A stretch of DNA of 64,000 nucleotides. It comes from Tubulanus polymorphus. Lineage: Eukaryota > Animalia > Nemertea. Made by a program: the position numbers and the translations under genes. The stretch lies in NCBI RefSeq assembly GCF_964204645.1, contig NC_134031.1, positions 5,022,001 to 5,086,000 on the forward strand. Reading direction: 5' to 3'. Shown here one piece after another: positions 16,420 to 46,929 of the stretch (position 1 is the first letter of the stretch; every line of letters begins with the position of its first letter). The notes beneath the pieces were generated by a model, which was not told the origin of the DNA, did not search any database, and saw only the letters and a list, made by a program, of their open reading frames with translations.

Positions 16420-19400
16420 TTACCAAACTTGACACTTATGGACCGGATTCATCGGCGAGCCTGACGGACAGCTGTAAGCCTCGGAAAACTCTTTAGTATT
16501 CGATACCGAGCCTATAACTCTGAAAATGTCCATAAATCAAGATGTTTAGTTTCTATGCTCAGACGGTTGATGCATTTAGAACCATGGGAAATTATCGAGG
16601 CATTTCTTAATTGAAATACTCAATTGGATAAGATATGATACGTATACAATTAAATTAAAATACCGCAAAAGCTAAATGGTGAAATTAAATATATATGTTT
16701 TGCCGGGAAGAAGCAATTATTCTATGTTCATGGTCTAATGGAAGCTATAGGCATAGGACGACTAATTCCAGTCGATAGATAAGAAGCGAAATCCACCACG
16801 ATCTGAAGTTGGATATTCTACTCAAATTCTCTACCGAATCGTTAGATTTATATCGACGTTTTCTTAATAAAACTTGCTCCAGTTACATATGATGGCTATC
16901 TCCATAGACTGGCACGGAAAGAGCCACGATCACGCGAGCGTTTTTGGCCCGTGCCAAATTTGGCAACTGTTCACATAAACTTGCCAAATTGGCCCTTGCC
17001 TTGTTTGGCTCGACCAACAACGTCGGATCAGGCCGAGAGATGGACTTAAGCACGGGCCAAAATAATGATCGCGTTTGAATTGCAACTGGTTCCGGATGAT
17101 ACTCGCTTCGCTTTGTTTGAGTATTGTCCAGTATCGAGTGACACGAGCCAAATTTGGCTCTCGGGTCTGGTCCGTGCCATTTTGGTCAGGACAAAATCGT
17201 CTCCGTGTGATCGCGGCTTTCTCTGGCGATCGATGGAGGTAGCCTCGTCTCCTTTGCAGTCTCGACAATTAAATCTATTTGATTCAAGAGTGGTATGTGT
17301 CCTAGTCTTACCGTAAGCGTCCTGGGCTGTGTCGACCGGAACGTAATATGCCGACATAGCTCTCTGGTCGGGCCTTACCGCACCACACCTGCGCGTCATA
17401 GTAGATAATATTTAGGTAAAGAGAATCAAAATATGCATATAGAAGCTGAAGCTTAAAGAGCATTGATCACACGCGTAAAACTAAACGAAATTTGAAAAAC
17501 AAAGCATTCGGGATGGATATCCCTTTTCTAAGTGTACGTTTCTCGTGATTTCATAGCTCTCGAAACTTTCGAGTCGTTACCGATTATAAAAAGTGCAGCG
17601 AAAAGGAAAAGAAGGTTTACGCGACGCAGACGATAGAACGAAGACGATAATATACGGGGATTAATCAGACGAGATGCTGTGACTGCTACTGCATGCATGC
17701 GTGGTGCGCGTTAAAATTACCCCGCGATTGAAGTCGAAATAGAGAACTCTTGACAGAACGCCAAAATGTTGAAGACTTTCTCGGATTGCCATTTGGAATG
17801 AAAACTTAAAGCCGTGTTCAAACTTCGTTATTTAGAACGTTCCAATCTAAATCGTATCAAGCGTTCACACTTAGCGAGAATTCATTAAATTTGTTCCTTT
17901 CCATTAGAACAATCTAAAAGATCGTTCCAGGTCCGTTGAAGTTTCTAGGACGGACGTTTTCCTATGTAAGAATAGAAACCTTGCTTTCATTATCTGTAAG
18001 TCTATGGACTAAAAGCTTGTCCATGGTTAGTCACGGAGTTGTGTCCAGCTGTACCAGTGTCGAAAACGTGAATGAAAGCACAGAATTTGGTCCGTTCCAG
18101 GTATGGGCCAAAATAGAACGGACTATGACTAGCCATAGTGTGAACGCCTTAGTTCAGCTGGAAATGTAAGTGGCCCTTGGTACAGACCGAATTTGTTGGT
18201 ACGCCACGTGATTTCTATATTTCACTTCAACCATTTTAGGGGTAATTGGGAAGGATATCTATCACCGACATACCTGAATTCACCGGGGCTGTGTCGACCT
18301 GTACTAATTCTGTTAATATAAGCCTCGTCTCGTAAAGTGCCACACCAAACCTAATGTAAGAACCACGCACACGTTAGCACATCTACGTAACAACGACAGG
18401 CTAAAAAAATCGATACCTTGTTTCTCCTTTCTGCTTAGCTTAAAAGTTGACCTGGCCAGCCGCCTGATACCCTGGACTCGGTTTTATAGACTGGTATAAT
18501 CTTTAACCTGGGGGTTATCTCGACAGAAAATGAATTGAGTTAGCCCCAGTCTATAAAAGTGAGCCCTGTACTTTTTCTAAAATCGTGAGACATTTTACCA
18601 TTACAAAACCGGTAGCTAGAGAAATTAAATGAACTGATTACAAATTTTATTGTATTTCACAAAATGACCCGGCCGCTGCGGAAAAAAAGGTATCATTTTT
18701 GTTTAGCCTAAACATTACCACTACTCGCACTGGGCACACGGCGTTCAAATCGTACAATGTATATCGTATCAAGCTTAGGCAGCCAAGAACTTTTTACCGG
18801 ATTTTCCTAAGAAGTTTGTTTATTTTGAGCGATTGAACTCGGAATTTCAAGATCATAGAACCGGGTTCCCTCATTTTGCGTCATAAACCTCCCAGCCAAT
18901 TTTTGTTGCATATAGCCAGTACGAGTGTGATAAACCATAAAAGTCAAACAAACTAACAAACAACAAACAAACGAAAACGGATTTTCTTGTTAGTAAAACA
19001 TGAACAAATTACTAAGGTGTGTTCGTAACACAAAAACACGTGTCTACACTTCTATAATACCAGCATTCATCATGCTCAGCCTAGGTCTCCGAAACACTAT
19101 ATAATGATATTTTTCGATGCACACTATTTCGGTGGCCTATTCCGTATTTCAAAAATTTACAATTCCCCGAACGAACCAGCTGACAGGAATGTTTTGCAAG
19201 AATTAAATTCAGCAGATTGAATGAAATCCTAATCAAATCGTACACGTTTAGCAAGATGGGTAATCCGATGTAAAGTGAGTCATCATGTCAGCTGCGCGGT
19301 TCCGGAAGTGTATACGTATATAGATAGGGTTTGAAAACAGACGAAACAATGAACGTCAAAGGTATGGTGTATTTTATACGCTTAAAACCAGCATTATACA

Positions 19401-46400: not shown

Positions 46401-46929
46401 TTAACGAGTAAATTTCGAATAAGGGACACTATAGGAGGTCGTGAAGAATCTTGACAGACGAAGCTTAATTTTCACAATATCGCAGCATCGTAGACATCGT
46501 GCCAAACGAAAGTAAACATTTACGGACATTTATTTTAGAGAGATCGTAAAATAGGTCAGAAAAACGTAAAAATCAAATAAACTTTAAAAAAAACGACGTC
46601 TAGGGAAAAATGATGTTTTGTTTCCCGACAAAAAATAAAAACGTTCGATTTTTTCCTTTGTAAAATCTATGATTGACGCTTGTCAAAAAGAGAAAAAAAC
46701 CGATTTGTATAAAGCGTGCAAAGAAACTAGCAGAAGTCCCACAGAAAATTATTGACTGAACACCTTGAGTGCATTGTTTAATGTATGTACGTGTGACTAT
46801 GTCGCACACAGTAGTTTTTGAGAAGAACAGTCACGAAATGAAATCTTACCTTATGCCGACGTGAGAATTTTCCTTAAACTTGCCGTCGTTACAGTTCACC
46901 ATGACGTAGTCCTGTTTGTAATCTCCCAT
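16420..46929 (-). CDS. Neprilysin-family (M13) type II membrane zinc metallopeptidase, about 756 aa. Exons in transcript order: [46850-46929 | 41650-41684 | 36093-36172], 34204-34325 (TM), [33151-33279 optional], 32357-32410, 31088-31249, 30603-30686, 29967-30169, 29332-29511, 28931-29017, 28380-28513, 27731-27824, 27107-27235, 26427-26525, 26027-26104, 25672-25775, 25500-25558, 24903-24954, [24035-24102 | 21600-21667], 20122-20252, 19807-19872, 19507-19614, [18274-18350 | 17312-17388], 16420-16519
   Basis: All exons are GT-AG and phase-compatible (2271 nt using one exon from each bracket, optional exon omitted). Motifs: [88 protein letters not shown]. Confidence 0.93.
16921..17221. mobile_element. 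Fold-back MITE in the last neprilysin intron
   Basis: Imperfect ~40-bp TIRs GAGCCACGATCACGCG...CGTGTGATCGCGGCTT with internal GGCCCGTGCCAAA-type subrepeats in both orientations. Confidence 0.6.
17312..17388 (-). CDS. Neprilysin duplicated exon 2B: [25 protein letters not shown](R)
   Basis: 77 nt, CAG acceptor, GTAAGA donor, phase 0/2, open, homologous to exon 2A. Confidence 0.88.
17859..18151. mobile_element. MITE between exons 2A and 2B
   Basis: TIR AAGCGTTCACACT...AGTGTGAACGCCTT with internal GTTCC/GGAAC-type subrepeats. Confidence 0.55.
18274..18350 (-). CDS. Neprilysin duplicated exon 2A: [25 protein letters not shown](R)
   Basis: 77 nt, TAG acceptor, GTATGT donor, phase 0/2, open. Confidence 0.9.
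21600..21667 (-). CDS. Neprilysin duplicated zinc-motif exon 1B: [22 protein letters not shown](G)
   Basis: 68 nt, TAG acceptor, GTAGCC donor, phase 2/1, intact HExxH. Confidence 0.88.
22010..23277 (+). mobile_element. Helentron/HINE-like (pearl/CvA-type) non-autonomous element with internal satellite
   Basis: Starts AAACTAG; about 4 tandem 154-bp units; (GGAC/GAAC)n microsatellite at 23194-23226; terminal hairpin TAGCCC-GC-TGGGACT-AA-AGTCCCA-AGT-GGGCTA followed by an A run. Confidence 0.7.
22072..22670 (+). repeat. 154-bp tandem repeat, about 4 copies
   Basis: ATTCAACGCCCCCTGGTG recurs at 22072, 22226, 22380 and 22534. Confidence 0.92.
24035..24102 (-). CDS. Neprilysin duplicated zinc-motif exon 1A: [22 protein letters not shown](G)
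   Basis: 68 nt, TAG acceptor, GTGGGT donor, phase 2/1, intact HExxH. Confidence 0.9.
28554..28636 (+). repeat. ~80-bp dispersed repeat, second copy at ~32641-32723
   Basis: Near-identical AGAAAAGTCAAC.CACGTC.TATATTTAGTTCGATGATTTT.CCCGAGGATTTGATTGTCTTTGAGGATCAGCCAAT. Confidence 0.85.
33151..33279 (-). CDS. Candidate optional stalk exon of neprilysin (43 codons; RPKR furin-type site, two NVT sequons)
   Basis: TTTCATAG acceptor, GTTAGT donor, symmetric phase 1/1, open: [42 protein letters not shown]; lies between the TM exon and the CYSADC exon. Confidence 0.6.
36093..36172 (-). CDS. Alternative first coding exon (proximal): [26 protein letters not shown](S)
   Basis: AAAATGG start context; phase-2 donor AG|GTATTC fits the TM exon. 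Confidence 0.6.
37896..38093. mobile_element. Palindromic MITE family (other copies ~31336-31490, ~42003-42112, ~44749-44925)
   Basis: TIR CCCAACGCACACGA...TTGTGTGCGTGGG; shared cores AAACATTATTTCCGAGC and TTTCCGAGATCAAAC among copies. Confidence 0.7.
39129..39405. mobile_element. MITE with CATGGGCGTCCC TIRs
   Basis: 12-bp perfect TIR CATGGGCGTCCC...GGGACGCCCATG; internal GGGGGTCTGGGGG motif similar to the 1747-2185 element; no clear TSD. Confidence 0.65.
40542..40777. mobile_element. One complete and one partial MITE in tandem; related copy in reverse at ~38578-38705
   Basis: TIR-like AGGGGCGGTTCCATA...TATGGAACCAGCCCT; shared GGTCTTAAGTTGTTA / TTGGTCTTAG motifs. Confidence 0.55.
40969..41064. 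repeat. (TA)n microsatellite
   Basis: About 95 bp of perfect TA. Confidence 0.97.
41650..41684 (-). CDS. Alternative first coding exon (middle): [11 protein letters not shown](S)
   Basis: AACATG start, strong phase-2 donor CAG|GTAAGA, possible acceptor at 41693. Confidence 0.5.
42965..43283. mobile_element. Repeat with tRNA-like inverted termini, copy 1
   Basis: ~65-bp imperfect TIRs containing GGCTGAGT and GGTTCGAATCCCTGCCG; internal part shared with 54254-54621 in opposite orientation. Confidence 0.75.
46850..46929 (-). CDS. Alternative first coding exon (distal): [26 protein letters not shown](S)
   Basis: AAGATGG start context; strong phase-2 donor AAG|GTAAGA. Confidence 0.65.

What the first reader, a model, noticed from the sequence alone, without database searches (positions are those of the whole stretch)
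16420..46929. A combinatorially spliced neprilysin: swappable active-site cassettes plus swappable targeting modules
Seen: one M13 gene with two independent duplicated-exon pairs, three phase-2 ATG exons that can each join the single TM exon, and one frame-preserving stalk exon. I found no duplicate of any other exon, so this is not a whole-gene duplication. Known: both duplicated exons map to the catalytic centre (human NEP numbering: M579/V580 and H583-E584-H587; V692/W693, H711, R717). Inference: up to 3x2x2x2=24 isoforms in which location, shedding and substrate preference are set independently. M13 diversity usually comes from gene duplication; I know of no described M13 gene with paired mutually exclusive catalytic exons, but cannot search to confirm.
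Basis: partly seen in the sequence, partly recalled or inferred. Interest (0 to 1): 0.92.

Follow-up and report, generated by a model that had tools for sequence, protein, structure and literature searches.

The report
Neprilysin gene with swappable catalytic exons
One neprilysin-type peptidase gene of an invertebrate (ribbon worm, by other agents' unchecked notes) carries two intact either/or versions of each of two exons that build its zinc active site. It can therefore probably make up to four slightly different enzymes, but the only RNA available shows one version of each.

Summary
The core observation holds. A 22-exon M13 (neprilysin/ECE-type) gene lies on the minus strand (stop at 16420; 756 codons by exon arithmetic). 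It has two tandem exon duplications.

- **HExxH exon, 68 nt:** 1A at 24102-24035 and 1B at 21667-21600.
- **VWCG...HSPG..R exon, 77 nt:** 2A at 18350-18274 and 2B at 17388-17312.

All four copies have AG/GT sites, and each pair shares length and phase. No other exon is duplicated.

Between 1A and 1B, synonymous sites are saturated and amino-acid change is low (pS 1.0, pN 0.13, p = 6e-10). No paralogue in the genome is a recent donor. Both copies have therefore long been kept as coding sequence. Support for 2A/2B is weaker (p = 0.05).

One spliced RNA contig (run X4) uses 1A and 2A. 1B has no cover in that run, and 2B could not be viewed.

The three ATG first exons exist in the sequence but are no more than chance gives. 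No separate stalk cassette exon was found. The 24-isoform figure is unsupported.

Four homologous genes (Lineus x2, Patella, Mytilus) have single copies. I found no literature on this.

Verdict: a likely mutually exclusive exon system, a new variant of a known kind, of moderate interest.

The parts
46850..46929 (-). Candidate first coding exon alpha (ATG at 46929, 80 coding nt, donor AAG|GTAAGA, ends in phase 2).
   Evidence: Read and listed. The phase fits the transmembrane exon acceptor. No RNA or homology support; at chance level.
41650..41684 (-). Candidate first coding exon beta (ATG at 41684, 35 coding nt, donor CAG|GTAAGA, phase 2).
   Evidence: No other support; at chance level.
36093..36172 (-). 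Candidate first coding exon gamma (ATG at 36172, 80 coding nt, weak donor CAG|GTATTC, phase 2).
   Evidence: Read. No paralogous match in the genome. Its donor falls below the score threshold used.
34204..34325 (-). Transmembrane exon (122 nt): basic stop-transfer stretch KKRRWLNRR followed by a hydrophobic helix. It has no in-frame ATG, so an upstream coding exon is required.
   Evidence: Sequence; translation.
32357..32410 (-). Exon 3 (54 nt, phase 1 to 1) with the conserved Cys-x4-Cys motif just outside the membrane. This is the only 'frame-preserving stalk exon' I could identify.
   Evidence: Splice-site and frame enumeration; sequence.
31088..31249 (-). Exon 4 (162 nt), [13 protein letters not shown] segment. 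It corresponds to the exon that is duplicated in the paralogue L017.
   Evidence: Pfam PF05649 at E = 9e-15.
25500..30686 (-). Constitutive exons 5-15: 30686-30603, 30169-29967, 29511-29332, 29017-28931, 28513-28380, 27824-27731, 27235-27107, 26525-26427, 26104-26027, 25775-25672, and 25558-25500 (NAFY motif).
   Evidence: tblastn anchors, boundaries, Pfam PF05649. Boundaries are predicted, not seen in RNA.
24903..24954 (-). Exon 16 (52 nt, [16 protein letters not shown]), the constitutive exon upstream of pair 1.
   Evidence: Sequence; boundaries.
24035..24102 (-). Exon 1A (68 nt): [22 protein letters not shown], identical to human NEP at 20 of the 21 aligned residues. This is the version seen in RNA.
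   Evidence: Sequence; PF01431; PDB alignment. RNA use is inferred from depth arithmetic: 70 nt at depth 53.7 in bin 24010-24200 of run X4.
21600..21667 (-). Exon 1B (68 nt): [22 protein letters not shown]. An intact alternative copy with Val at the NEP M579 position.
   Evidence: Sequence; PF01431; PDB alignment. Selection test. Not a recent copy of any paralogue. Zero cover in RNA run X4.
20122..20252 (-). Exon 18 (131 nt), constitutive.
   Evidence: Sequence. Seen as a piece of the spliced contig, record 26.
19807..19872 (-). Exon 19 (66 nt), GENIADNGG, holding the third zinc ligand (NEP E646).
   Evidence: Sequence. The joint between 19613 and 19806 in run X4, and the record arithmetic, support it.
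19507..19614 (-). Exon 20 (108 nt), constitutive, upstream of pair 2.
   Evidence: Sequence. Seen as a piece of record 26, with its joint to 2A.
18274..18350 (-). Exon 2A (77 nt): [25 protein letters not shown](R). This is the version seen in RNA.
   Evidence: Sequence. Joint between 18348 and 19505 (GT..AG on the gene's strand) in run X4, with 75 letters on the 2A side. PDB alignment.
17312..17388 (-). Exon 2B (77 nt): [25 protein letters not shown](R). An intact alternative copy, closer than 2A to most homologues compared.
   Evidence: Sequence. tblastn. PDB alignment. Its closest relative in the genome is 2A. RNA use was not viewable.
16420..16519 (-). Coding part of the last exon ([32 protein letters not shown], stop TAA at 16422-16420).
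   Evidence: Sequence; PF01431.

Best explanation
This is a type II membrane zinc metallopeptidase gene of the M13 (neprilysin/ECE) family. Two of the exons that build the catalytic centre have each been duplicated in tandem.

The splicing machinery most likely takes one copy of each pair per mRNA (mutually exclusive splicing). The enzyme then keeps the same zinc ligands and catalytic residues but changes neighbouring residues. In pair 1, Met becomes Val at the S1' pocket position M579, plus four other residues. In pair 2, 11 of 25 residues change in the helix between W693 and H711 and next to R717.

For pair 1, exclusivity is enforced at least by reading frame. Using both 68-nt copies, or neither, gives an early stop that should lead to mRNA decay. 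For pair 2, the wrong combinations end in a truncated, inactive C-terminus.

Shown: the gene, the four intact exons, long-term coding constraint on 1A/1B, and use of 1A and 2A in one RNA sample.

Inferred: that 1B and 2B are spliced in at all (perhaps in other tissues or stages), that the choice is exclusive, and that the versions differ in substrate preference.
For: - Exon anatomy was read directly. Each pair has equal length (68 and 77 nt) and equal phase, with canonical AG/GT sites.
- There are exactly two copies of each exon and no other duplicated exon.
- Selection on 1A vs 1B: 15 of 21 differences lie at third codon positions, pS = 1.0, pN = 0.126, Fisher p = 6e-10. For 2A vs 2B: pS 0.60, pN 0.34, p = 0.05.
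- 1B is not a fresh copy of another M13 gene. Its best DNA identity to any of 10 paralogous exons is 46/68, against 47/68 to 1A, and there is no flank similarity.
- 2A and 2B are each other's nearest relatives in the genome.
- 2B is more like the homologues than 2A in three of four comparisons.
- All family-invariant residues are kept in all four copies.
- Frame test: 1A+1B, or neither, gives a stop about 50 codons on. 2A+2B, or neither, stops in the last exon.
- RNA: a 3319-nt spliced contig in run X4 has GT..AG joints at the predicted boundaries, uses 2A, and by depth arithmetic uses 1A.
- A neighbouring paralogue carries a tandem pair of a different pocket exon, so the design recurs in this genome.
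Against: - The only RNA run with a spliced contig shows a single form, 1A-2A. Exon 1B has zero contig cover there, and the contig is unbroken across both choice points. 1B and 2B are therefore rare or absent in that sample.
- The selection signal for pair 2 is only borderline.
- No closer relative was available to test conservation of the pairs. Four more distant homologous genes have single copies.
- No docking/selector RNA structure above chance was found.
Confidence: 0.62

Rival explanations
1. 1B and 2B are unused relics of old exon duplications. The gene makes one catalytic form only (1A-2A), and the extra copies merely happen to be intact.
For: The one spliced RNA contig carries 1A and 2A only, and 1B has no cover in that run. 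Homologous genes in Lineus, Patella and Mytilus work with single copies.
Against: A neutral copy old enough to saturate synonymous sites would not show 3/3/15 differences by codon position. Nor would it keep every invariant residue, an open frame and both splice sites. 2B is more homologue-like than the expressed 2A in most comparisons.
Confidence: 0.2
2. The full combinatorial model of the first reader: three first exons x a stalk cassette x two x two, assorting independently to give up to 24 isoforms with separately set location, shedding and specificity.
For: ATG exons of the right phase exist. Alternative N-terminal exons are the usual difference between annotated isoforms of invertebrate M13 genes. 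From my own knowledge, they are also the basis of the ECE-1a-d isoforms.
Against: The number of phase-compatible ATG exons is what shuffled sequence gives: 3 hits against 4.4 +/- 2.5. They have no homology support. No cassette exon lies between the transmembrane exon and exon 3. The 54-nt exon 3 holds a conserved Cys motif. No RNA shows more than one form. Independence of the choices is untested.
Confidence: 0.08
3. The second copies act as 'poison' exons. Including 1B together with 1A shifts the frame and sends the mRNA to decay, which tunes expression level rather than making a second enzyme.
For: 1A+1B gives a stop far upstream of the last exon junction.
Against: A poison exon needs no protein-level conservation, yet 1B is conserved as protein with saturated silent sites. 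For pair 2, the stop produced by double inclusion lies in the last exon, where decay is not expected.
Confidence: 0.05

Closest known systems
Mutually exclusive splicing of tandemly duplicated exons (for example pyruvate kinase M1/M2, sodium-channel exon 5a/5b, ATE1 7a/7b; reviewed in PMC9013439, PMC9741552, PMC5740500)
   Same: Adjacent homologous exons of equal length and phase, each with its own splice sites. The length is not a multiple of three, so double use or double skipping breaks the frame. Both copies are under purifying selection.
   Different: The host gene is an M13 peptidase, and there are two separate pairs that both lie in the catalytic centre. I found no M13 gene in the main text of the human catalogues checked, nor in full-text searches. 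Exclusivity is not yet seen in RNA here, and no competing RNA structure was detected.
Human neprilysin (MME; PDB 1DMT and others)
   Same: Same family and same catalytic residues. Exon 1A is identical to human NEP at 20 of the 21 aligned residues (NEP 571-591). Exon 2 aligns to NEP 692-716.
   Different: To my knowledge, human MME has one version of each of these exons, and its isoform diversity lies in 5' untranslated exons. About 50% identity overall is expected, as for the invertebrate homologues.
ECE-1 isoforms a-d and MMEL1/SEP soluble vs membrane forms (own knowledge); annotated N-terminal isoforms of invertebrate M13 genes
   Same: M13 genes commonly vary the cytoplasmic N-terminus through alternative first exons. 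All six annotated isoform sets I compared differ mainly at the N-terminus, and one variant also lacks the C-terminal 32 residues. MMEL1 varies a stalk exon that controls secretion.
   Different: Here these two kinds of variation are only candidates from the sequence, at chance level. What is distinctive here, the catalytic exon pairs, has no counterpart in those genes.
Paralogous M13 gene 63 kb away in the same genome (L017, G000:C7:5146001-5156000)
   Same: It also carries a tandem duplicated exon, at L017 9561-9400 and 8402-8229, minus strand. This exon is the counterpart of exon 4 here, and it also forms part of the substrate pocket (the NEP R102/R110 region).
   Different: A different exon is duplicated. 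That gene's HExxH and WCG exons are single, and the window gene's exon 4 is single.

Membership tests
Peptidase family M13 (neprilysin/ECE) | HExxH zinc-binding motif in the C-terminal catalytic domain (Pfam PF01431) | tested here: met
   HEITH is present in both 1A and 1B. PF01431 hits lie above the cut-off for 1A (33.7 bits), 1B (28.2 bits) and exon 18 (35.0 bits). The genome-wide scan agrees.
Peptidase family M13 (neprilysin/ECE) | Third zinc ligand in the ENxADxGG motif | tested here: met
   GENIADNGG lies in exon 19 (19872-19807), read and aligned.
Peptidase family M13 (neprilysin/ECE) | N-terminal M13 domain (Pfam PF05649) | tested here: met
   Five exon peptides were scanned. Four hit PF05649 above its 32-bit cut-off and one (29967-30167) scored 21.8 bits, below it. 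The hits fall in colinear profile positions 1-40, 72-131, 134-195, 297-337 and 338-370.
Peptidase family M13 (neprilysin/ECE) | Type II membrane topology: short N-terminal tail, one transmembrane helix, conserved Cys just outside the membrane, C-terminal CxxW | tested here: met
   The transmembrane exon at 34325-34204 has a basic stretch followed by a hydrophobic helix. The Cys-x4-Cys motif is in exon 3. The protein ends in CQVW. Topology is inferred from the sequence only.
Mutually exclusive exon cluster from tandem exon duplication | Adjacent homologous exons of the same length and phase, each with its own splice sites | tested here: met
   68/68 nt and 77/77 nt, AG...GT at all four. Homology E = 4e-12 and 1e-7.
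Mutually exclusive exon cluster from tandem exon duplication | Both copies maintained by purifying selection | tested here: met
   Pair 1: pS 1.0 against pN 0.13, p = 6e-10. Pair 2 is borderline: pS 0.60 against pN 0.34, p = 0.05.
Mutually exclusive exon cluster from tandem exon duplication | Transcripts contain exactly one copy, and each copy is found in some transcripts | tested here: inconclusive
   One spliced contig has 1A and 2A only. 1B has zero cover in that run, and 2B lay outside the one stretch I could lay. Contigs drop rare variants.
Mutually exclusive exon cluster from tandem exon duplication | A mechanism that prevents double inclusion or double skipping | tested here: met
   Frame test. 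Pair 1 gives an early stop, for which decay is expected. Pair 2 gives a stop in the last exon, so a truncated product. No competing RNA structure above chance was found. All sites are GT-AG, which gives no sign of U2/U12 incompatibility.

The most novel reading that the evidence does not exclude
In this lineage, M13 peptidases diversify their substrate pocket by exon-cassette swapping instead of, or on top of, gene duplication. Three different pocket-forming exons have been duplicated in tandem: the S2' exon in the neighbouring paralogues, and the zinc/S1' exon and the H711/R717 exon here. In this gene the two choices are made independently and by tissue, giving four enzymes with different peptide preferences from one locus.
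Probability: 0.25. Interest if true: 0.7.

Novelty: new variant of a known kind. Interest (0 to 1): 0.5.

Why it matters
Neprilysin-family enzymes switch neuropeptide and hormone signals off. Their diversity is normally explained by gene duplication and by N-terminal isoforms that set location.

If 1B and 2B are spliced in, a single gene here re-tunes the catalytic pocket itself by either/or exons, at two places. That would be a natural experiment on which second-shell residues set M13 specificity: for example Met vs Val at the M579 position, and the helix between W693 and H711. It would also add to the short list of enzymes whose active site is varied by mutually exclusive splicing. A paralogue with a third duplicated pocket exon suggests a lineage-wide habit.

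It remains a sequence-based case, with RNA support for only one form.

Tried and rejected
1. **RNA evidence.** The look-up of sequencing runs gave four runs of one study, none on record as RNA. The single read-laying run (18210-24200) showed that X4 holds a spliced contig, while X2 and X3 look like patchy DNA. The cap kept me from laying 2B, the last exon and the 5' exons.
2. **Search for the species' own transcript protein.** I used a profile of four homologues plus window exons, given exon by exon by reference (A4). It is not in the collection, and the best extra hit (P0172, 54% identical) is an intronless gene in another organism. The first alignment, with one homologue only (A1), was misaligned and was dropped.
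3. **Closer relatives.** The best single-exon hits reach only 63% identity. Loci L003-L005 did not reach the catalytic exons, and the Argonauta locus was too long to fetch.
4. **Recent copy from a paralogue.** Rejected.
5. **Assembly artefact.** Rejected. The copies are only 69% and 60% identical, and contigs of the DNA run cover 1A, 1B and 2A separately.
6. **Competing RNA structures.**
   - A common docking window for both selectors was no better than shuffles: -25.7 against -24.3 +/- 1.6, and -21.3 against -21.5 +/- 1.0 kcal/mol. An earlier run of that script timed out.
   - The 14-nt inverted repeat at 17379-17392 / 17695-17708 is one of nine similar pairs in 2.4 kb.
7. **Stalk cassette exon.** None at normal thresholds, and only a weak 27-nt candidate at 33223-33197.
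8. **Other genes in 34-47 kb.** No Pfam hit above a family's cut-off among the long ORFs of 33.3-46.2 kb. One ORF just outside that range, at 33283-33855, had a sub-threshold hit to PF25358.
9. **Joined model.** Residue mapping rests on exon-wise alignment to solved NEP chains. In one script neighbouring exons were concatenated only to locate stop codons, and nothing joined was printed or saved.

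
Full report
**What is there.** The window lies at G000:C7:5022001-5086000 of a 268-Mb genome. Stop-to-stop translation of the minus strand and tblastn with full-length M13 proteins found through one exon show a single neprilysin/ECE-type gene. Those proteins come from Patella, Lineus, Haliotis and Mytilus and are about 50% identical.

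With splice sites and phases enumerated and key junctions read directly, the model has 22 coding exons. Exon lengths sum to 2271 nt, or 756 codons, from an 80-nt first coding exon to the stop at 16422-16420. This length fits the homologues, which are mostly 738-793 aa.

Family membership was tested exon by exon. PF05649 and PF01431 hits are in colinear order. [18 protein letters not shown] and the C-terminal CQVW are present, and so are a transmembrane exon and a Cys-x4-Cys motif. Other agents' notes call the genome the ribbon worm Tubulanus polymorphus. I did not check that. My own data say only that it is about equally distant from molluscs and from the nemertean Lineus.

**The two exon pairs.**

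| Exon | Coordinates | Length | Translation |
|---|---|---|---|
| 1A | 24102-24035 | 68 nt | [22 protein letters not shown] |
| 1B | 21667-21600 | 68 nt | [22 protein letters not shown] |
| 2A | 18350-18274 | 77 nt | [25 protein letters not shown] |
| 2B | 17388-17312 | 77 nt | [25 protein letters not shown] |

- Pair 1 exons start with one base that completes a Lys codon and end with one base of a Gly codon.
- Pair 2 exons start in phase 0 and end with two bases that, with the first base of the last exon, give Arg in both versions.
- All four have AG and GT at their borders.
- A six-frame self-comparison finds these two pairs and no other duplicated exon in the gene. A relaxed search finds no third copies.
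- Alignment to solved human neprilysin chains fixes the numbering at chain index + 53.
- Exon 1 is NEP 571-592, with M579, V580, H583, E584 and H587.
- Exon 2 is NEP 692-716, with V692, W693 and H711, plus the split codon of R717.
All of these named residues are identical in both versions except M579, which is Met in 1A and Val in 1B.

**Are both copies real exons?**

- The copies are old. They are 47/68 and 46/77 identical in DNA, with no similarity in the flanking introns. This also rules out an assembly artefact. Contigs of the DNA run cover 1A, 1B and 2A separately.
- Between 1A and 1B, 15 of 21 differences are at third codon positions. Synonymous sites are saturated (pS 1.0) while pN is 0.126 (Fisher p = 6e-10).
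- Neither copy is a recent import. Among ten other HExxH exons of the genome, the best DNA identity is 53/68 to 1A and 46/68 to 1B.
- 2A and 2B are each other's nearest relatives in the genome. Their pattern is weaker (pS 0.60, pN 0.34, p = 0.05).
- 2B is closer than 2A to three of four homologues compared.
- A copy left to drift for that long would not keep its frame, both splice sites and every invariant residue. I therefore take 1B, and less firmly 2B, to be maintained coding exons.

**Exclusivity.** A script that only looked for stops gave these results:

| Combination | Result |
|---|---|
| 1A alone or 1B alone | Frame stays open |
| 1A+1B, or neither | Stop about 50 codons on, far upstream of the last junction, so decay is expected |
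| 2A+2B, or neither | Stop in the last exon, so a truncated product without the conserved C-terminus |

I found no pair of selector sequences sharing a docking site better than shuffled controls. The short inverted repeat at the 2B acceptor is one of nine like it in 2.4 kb.

**RNA.** No run is on record as RNA.

- It has GT..AG joints exactly at the predicted borders of exons 18, 19, 20 and 2A.
- The 2A side is 75 letters long, so its donor is used.
- Bin depths match exon lengths to the base: 28.2, 2.15, 16.9, 23.6 and 11.0.
- The bin holding 1A has 19.7, which equals 70 nt at depth 53.7. That is 68 nt plus the two ambiguous GT letters.
- The bins holding 1B contain nothing beyond an intronic contig.
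- The expressed form in that sample is therefore 1A-2A. 1B is rare or absent there. The unbroken contig suggests the same for 2B, which I could not view.
- Contigs drop rare variants, so this neither proves nor excludes the use of 1B and 2B elsewhere.
- The species' own transcript protein is not in the protein collection.

**The 5' end.**

- The transmembrane exon has no in-frame ATG and an acceptor that needs a phase-2 donor.
- Three ATG exons fit: 46929-46850, 41684-41650 and 36172-36093. Shuffles give 4.4 +/- 2.5 such hits.
- The two 26-residue peptides tested, from the exons at 46929 and 36172, have no match elsewhere in the genome. The 11-residue one was not searched.
- The X4 contig has 297 nt upstream of the transmembrane exon. 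At least one first exon is therefore real, but I cannot say which.
- Alternative N-termini are common in M13 genes. Six annotated invertebrate isoform sets differ mainly there, and one variant also lacks the C-terminal 32 residues.
- No cassette exon lies between the transmembrane exon and exon 3.
- The 54-nt exon 3 is frame-preserving but carries the conserved Cys motif.
- The location and shedding parts of the reading, and the figure of 24 isoforms, are therefore unsupported.

**Comparison and novelty.**

- Homologous genes of Lineus (two genes) and Mytilus have single copies of all exons, and so does the Patella gene. The Patella gene and one Lineus gene share the window gene's exon borders around the catalytic centre.
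- In this genome, only this M13 gene has the HExxH pair.
- The paralogue 63 kb away has a tandem pair of the exon-4 counterpart.
- Full-text searches found no description of mutually exclusive catalytic exons in an M13 gene.
- The design itself, tandem exon duplication with either/or splicing, is well known (PMC9013439, PMC9741552).
- I rate it a new variant of a known kind.

Noticed in passing
window 1-6500 and 8600-16270: A large tandem segmental duplication. Dozens of ORF pieces are 60-100% identical in the same order. A first-reader note calls these RhoBTB copies. Copy 2 ends about 150 nt from the M13 stop codon.
   Followed up: no
window 15589-16420: The X4 contig runs about 830 nt past the M13 stop, by record arithmetic. 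That takes it into the end of the duplicated segment on the other strand. Either the 3' UTRs of convergent genes overlap, or an unstranded contig merges two transcripts.
   Followed up: no
window 22010-23400 (inside the 1A-1B intron): A very high-copy repeat, with summed word depth up to 5e5 in run X1. It includes a 154-nt satellite of 3.9 copies at 22071-22674.
   Followed up: partly
L017 (G000:C7:5146001-5156000) 9561-9400 and 8402-8229, minus strand: The neighbouring M13 paralogue has two tandem copies of the PCDxFYxFACGxW exon, which is the NEP R102/R110 (S2') region. They are 46% and 41% identical to the Patella protein.
   Followed up: partly
L007 (G000:C7:683427-684092) and L008 (G000:C7:5149127-5149792): Two M13 paralogue copies lie 4.4 Mb apart in opposite orientation. 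Their HExxH exons are identical, and they match at 565 of 666 positions over 666 nt. This points to a diverged segmental duplication.
   Followed up: partly
L006 3001-5334: An intronless 777-aa M13 gene (P0172, 54% identical to the window gene) sits beside a Helitron-like ORF on a 1.48-Mb ENA contig. It is probably a retrocopy. Its pair-2 segment is closer to 2B than to 2A.
   Followed up: partly
L019 44016-44333 (Mytilus californianus M13 gene): Short tandem, degenerate repeats of the IVNDTALDDAYKTV exon fragment lie next to the real exon.
   Followed up: no
window 40970-41080 and 24146-24221: A (TA)n microsatellite sits in the 5' intron region. An (ATT)25 array lies directly upstream of the 1A acceptor.
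   Followed up: no
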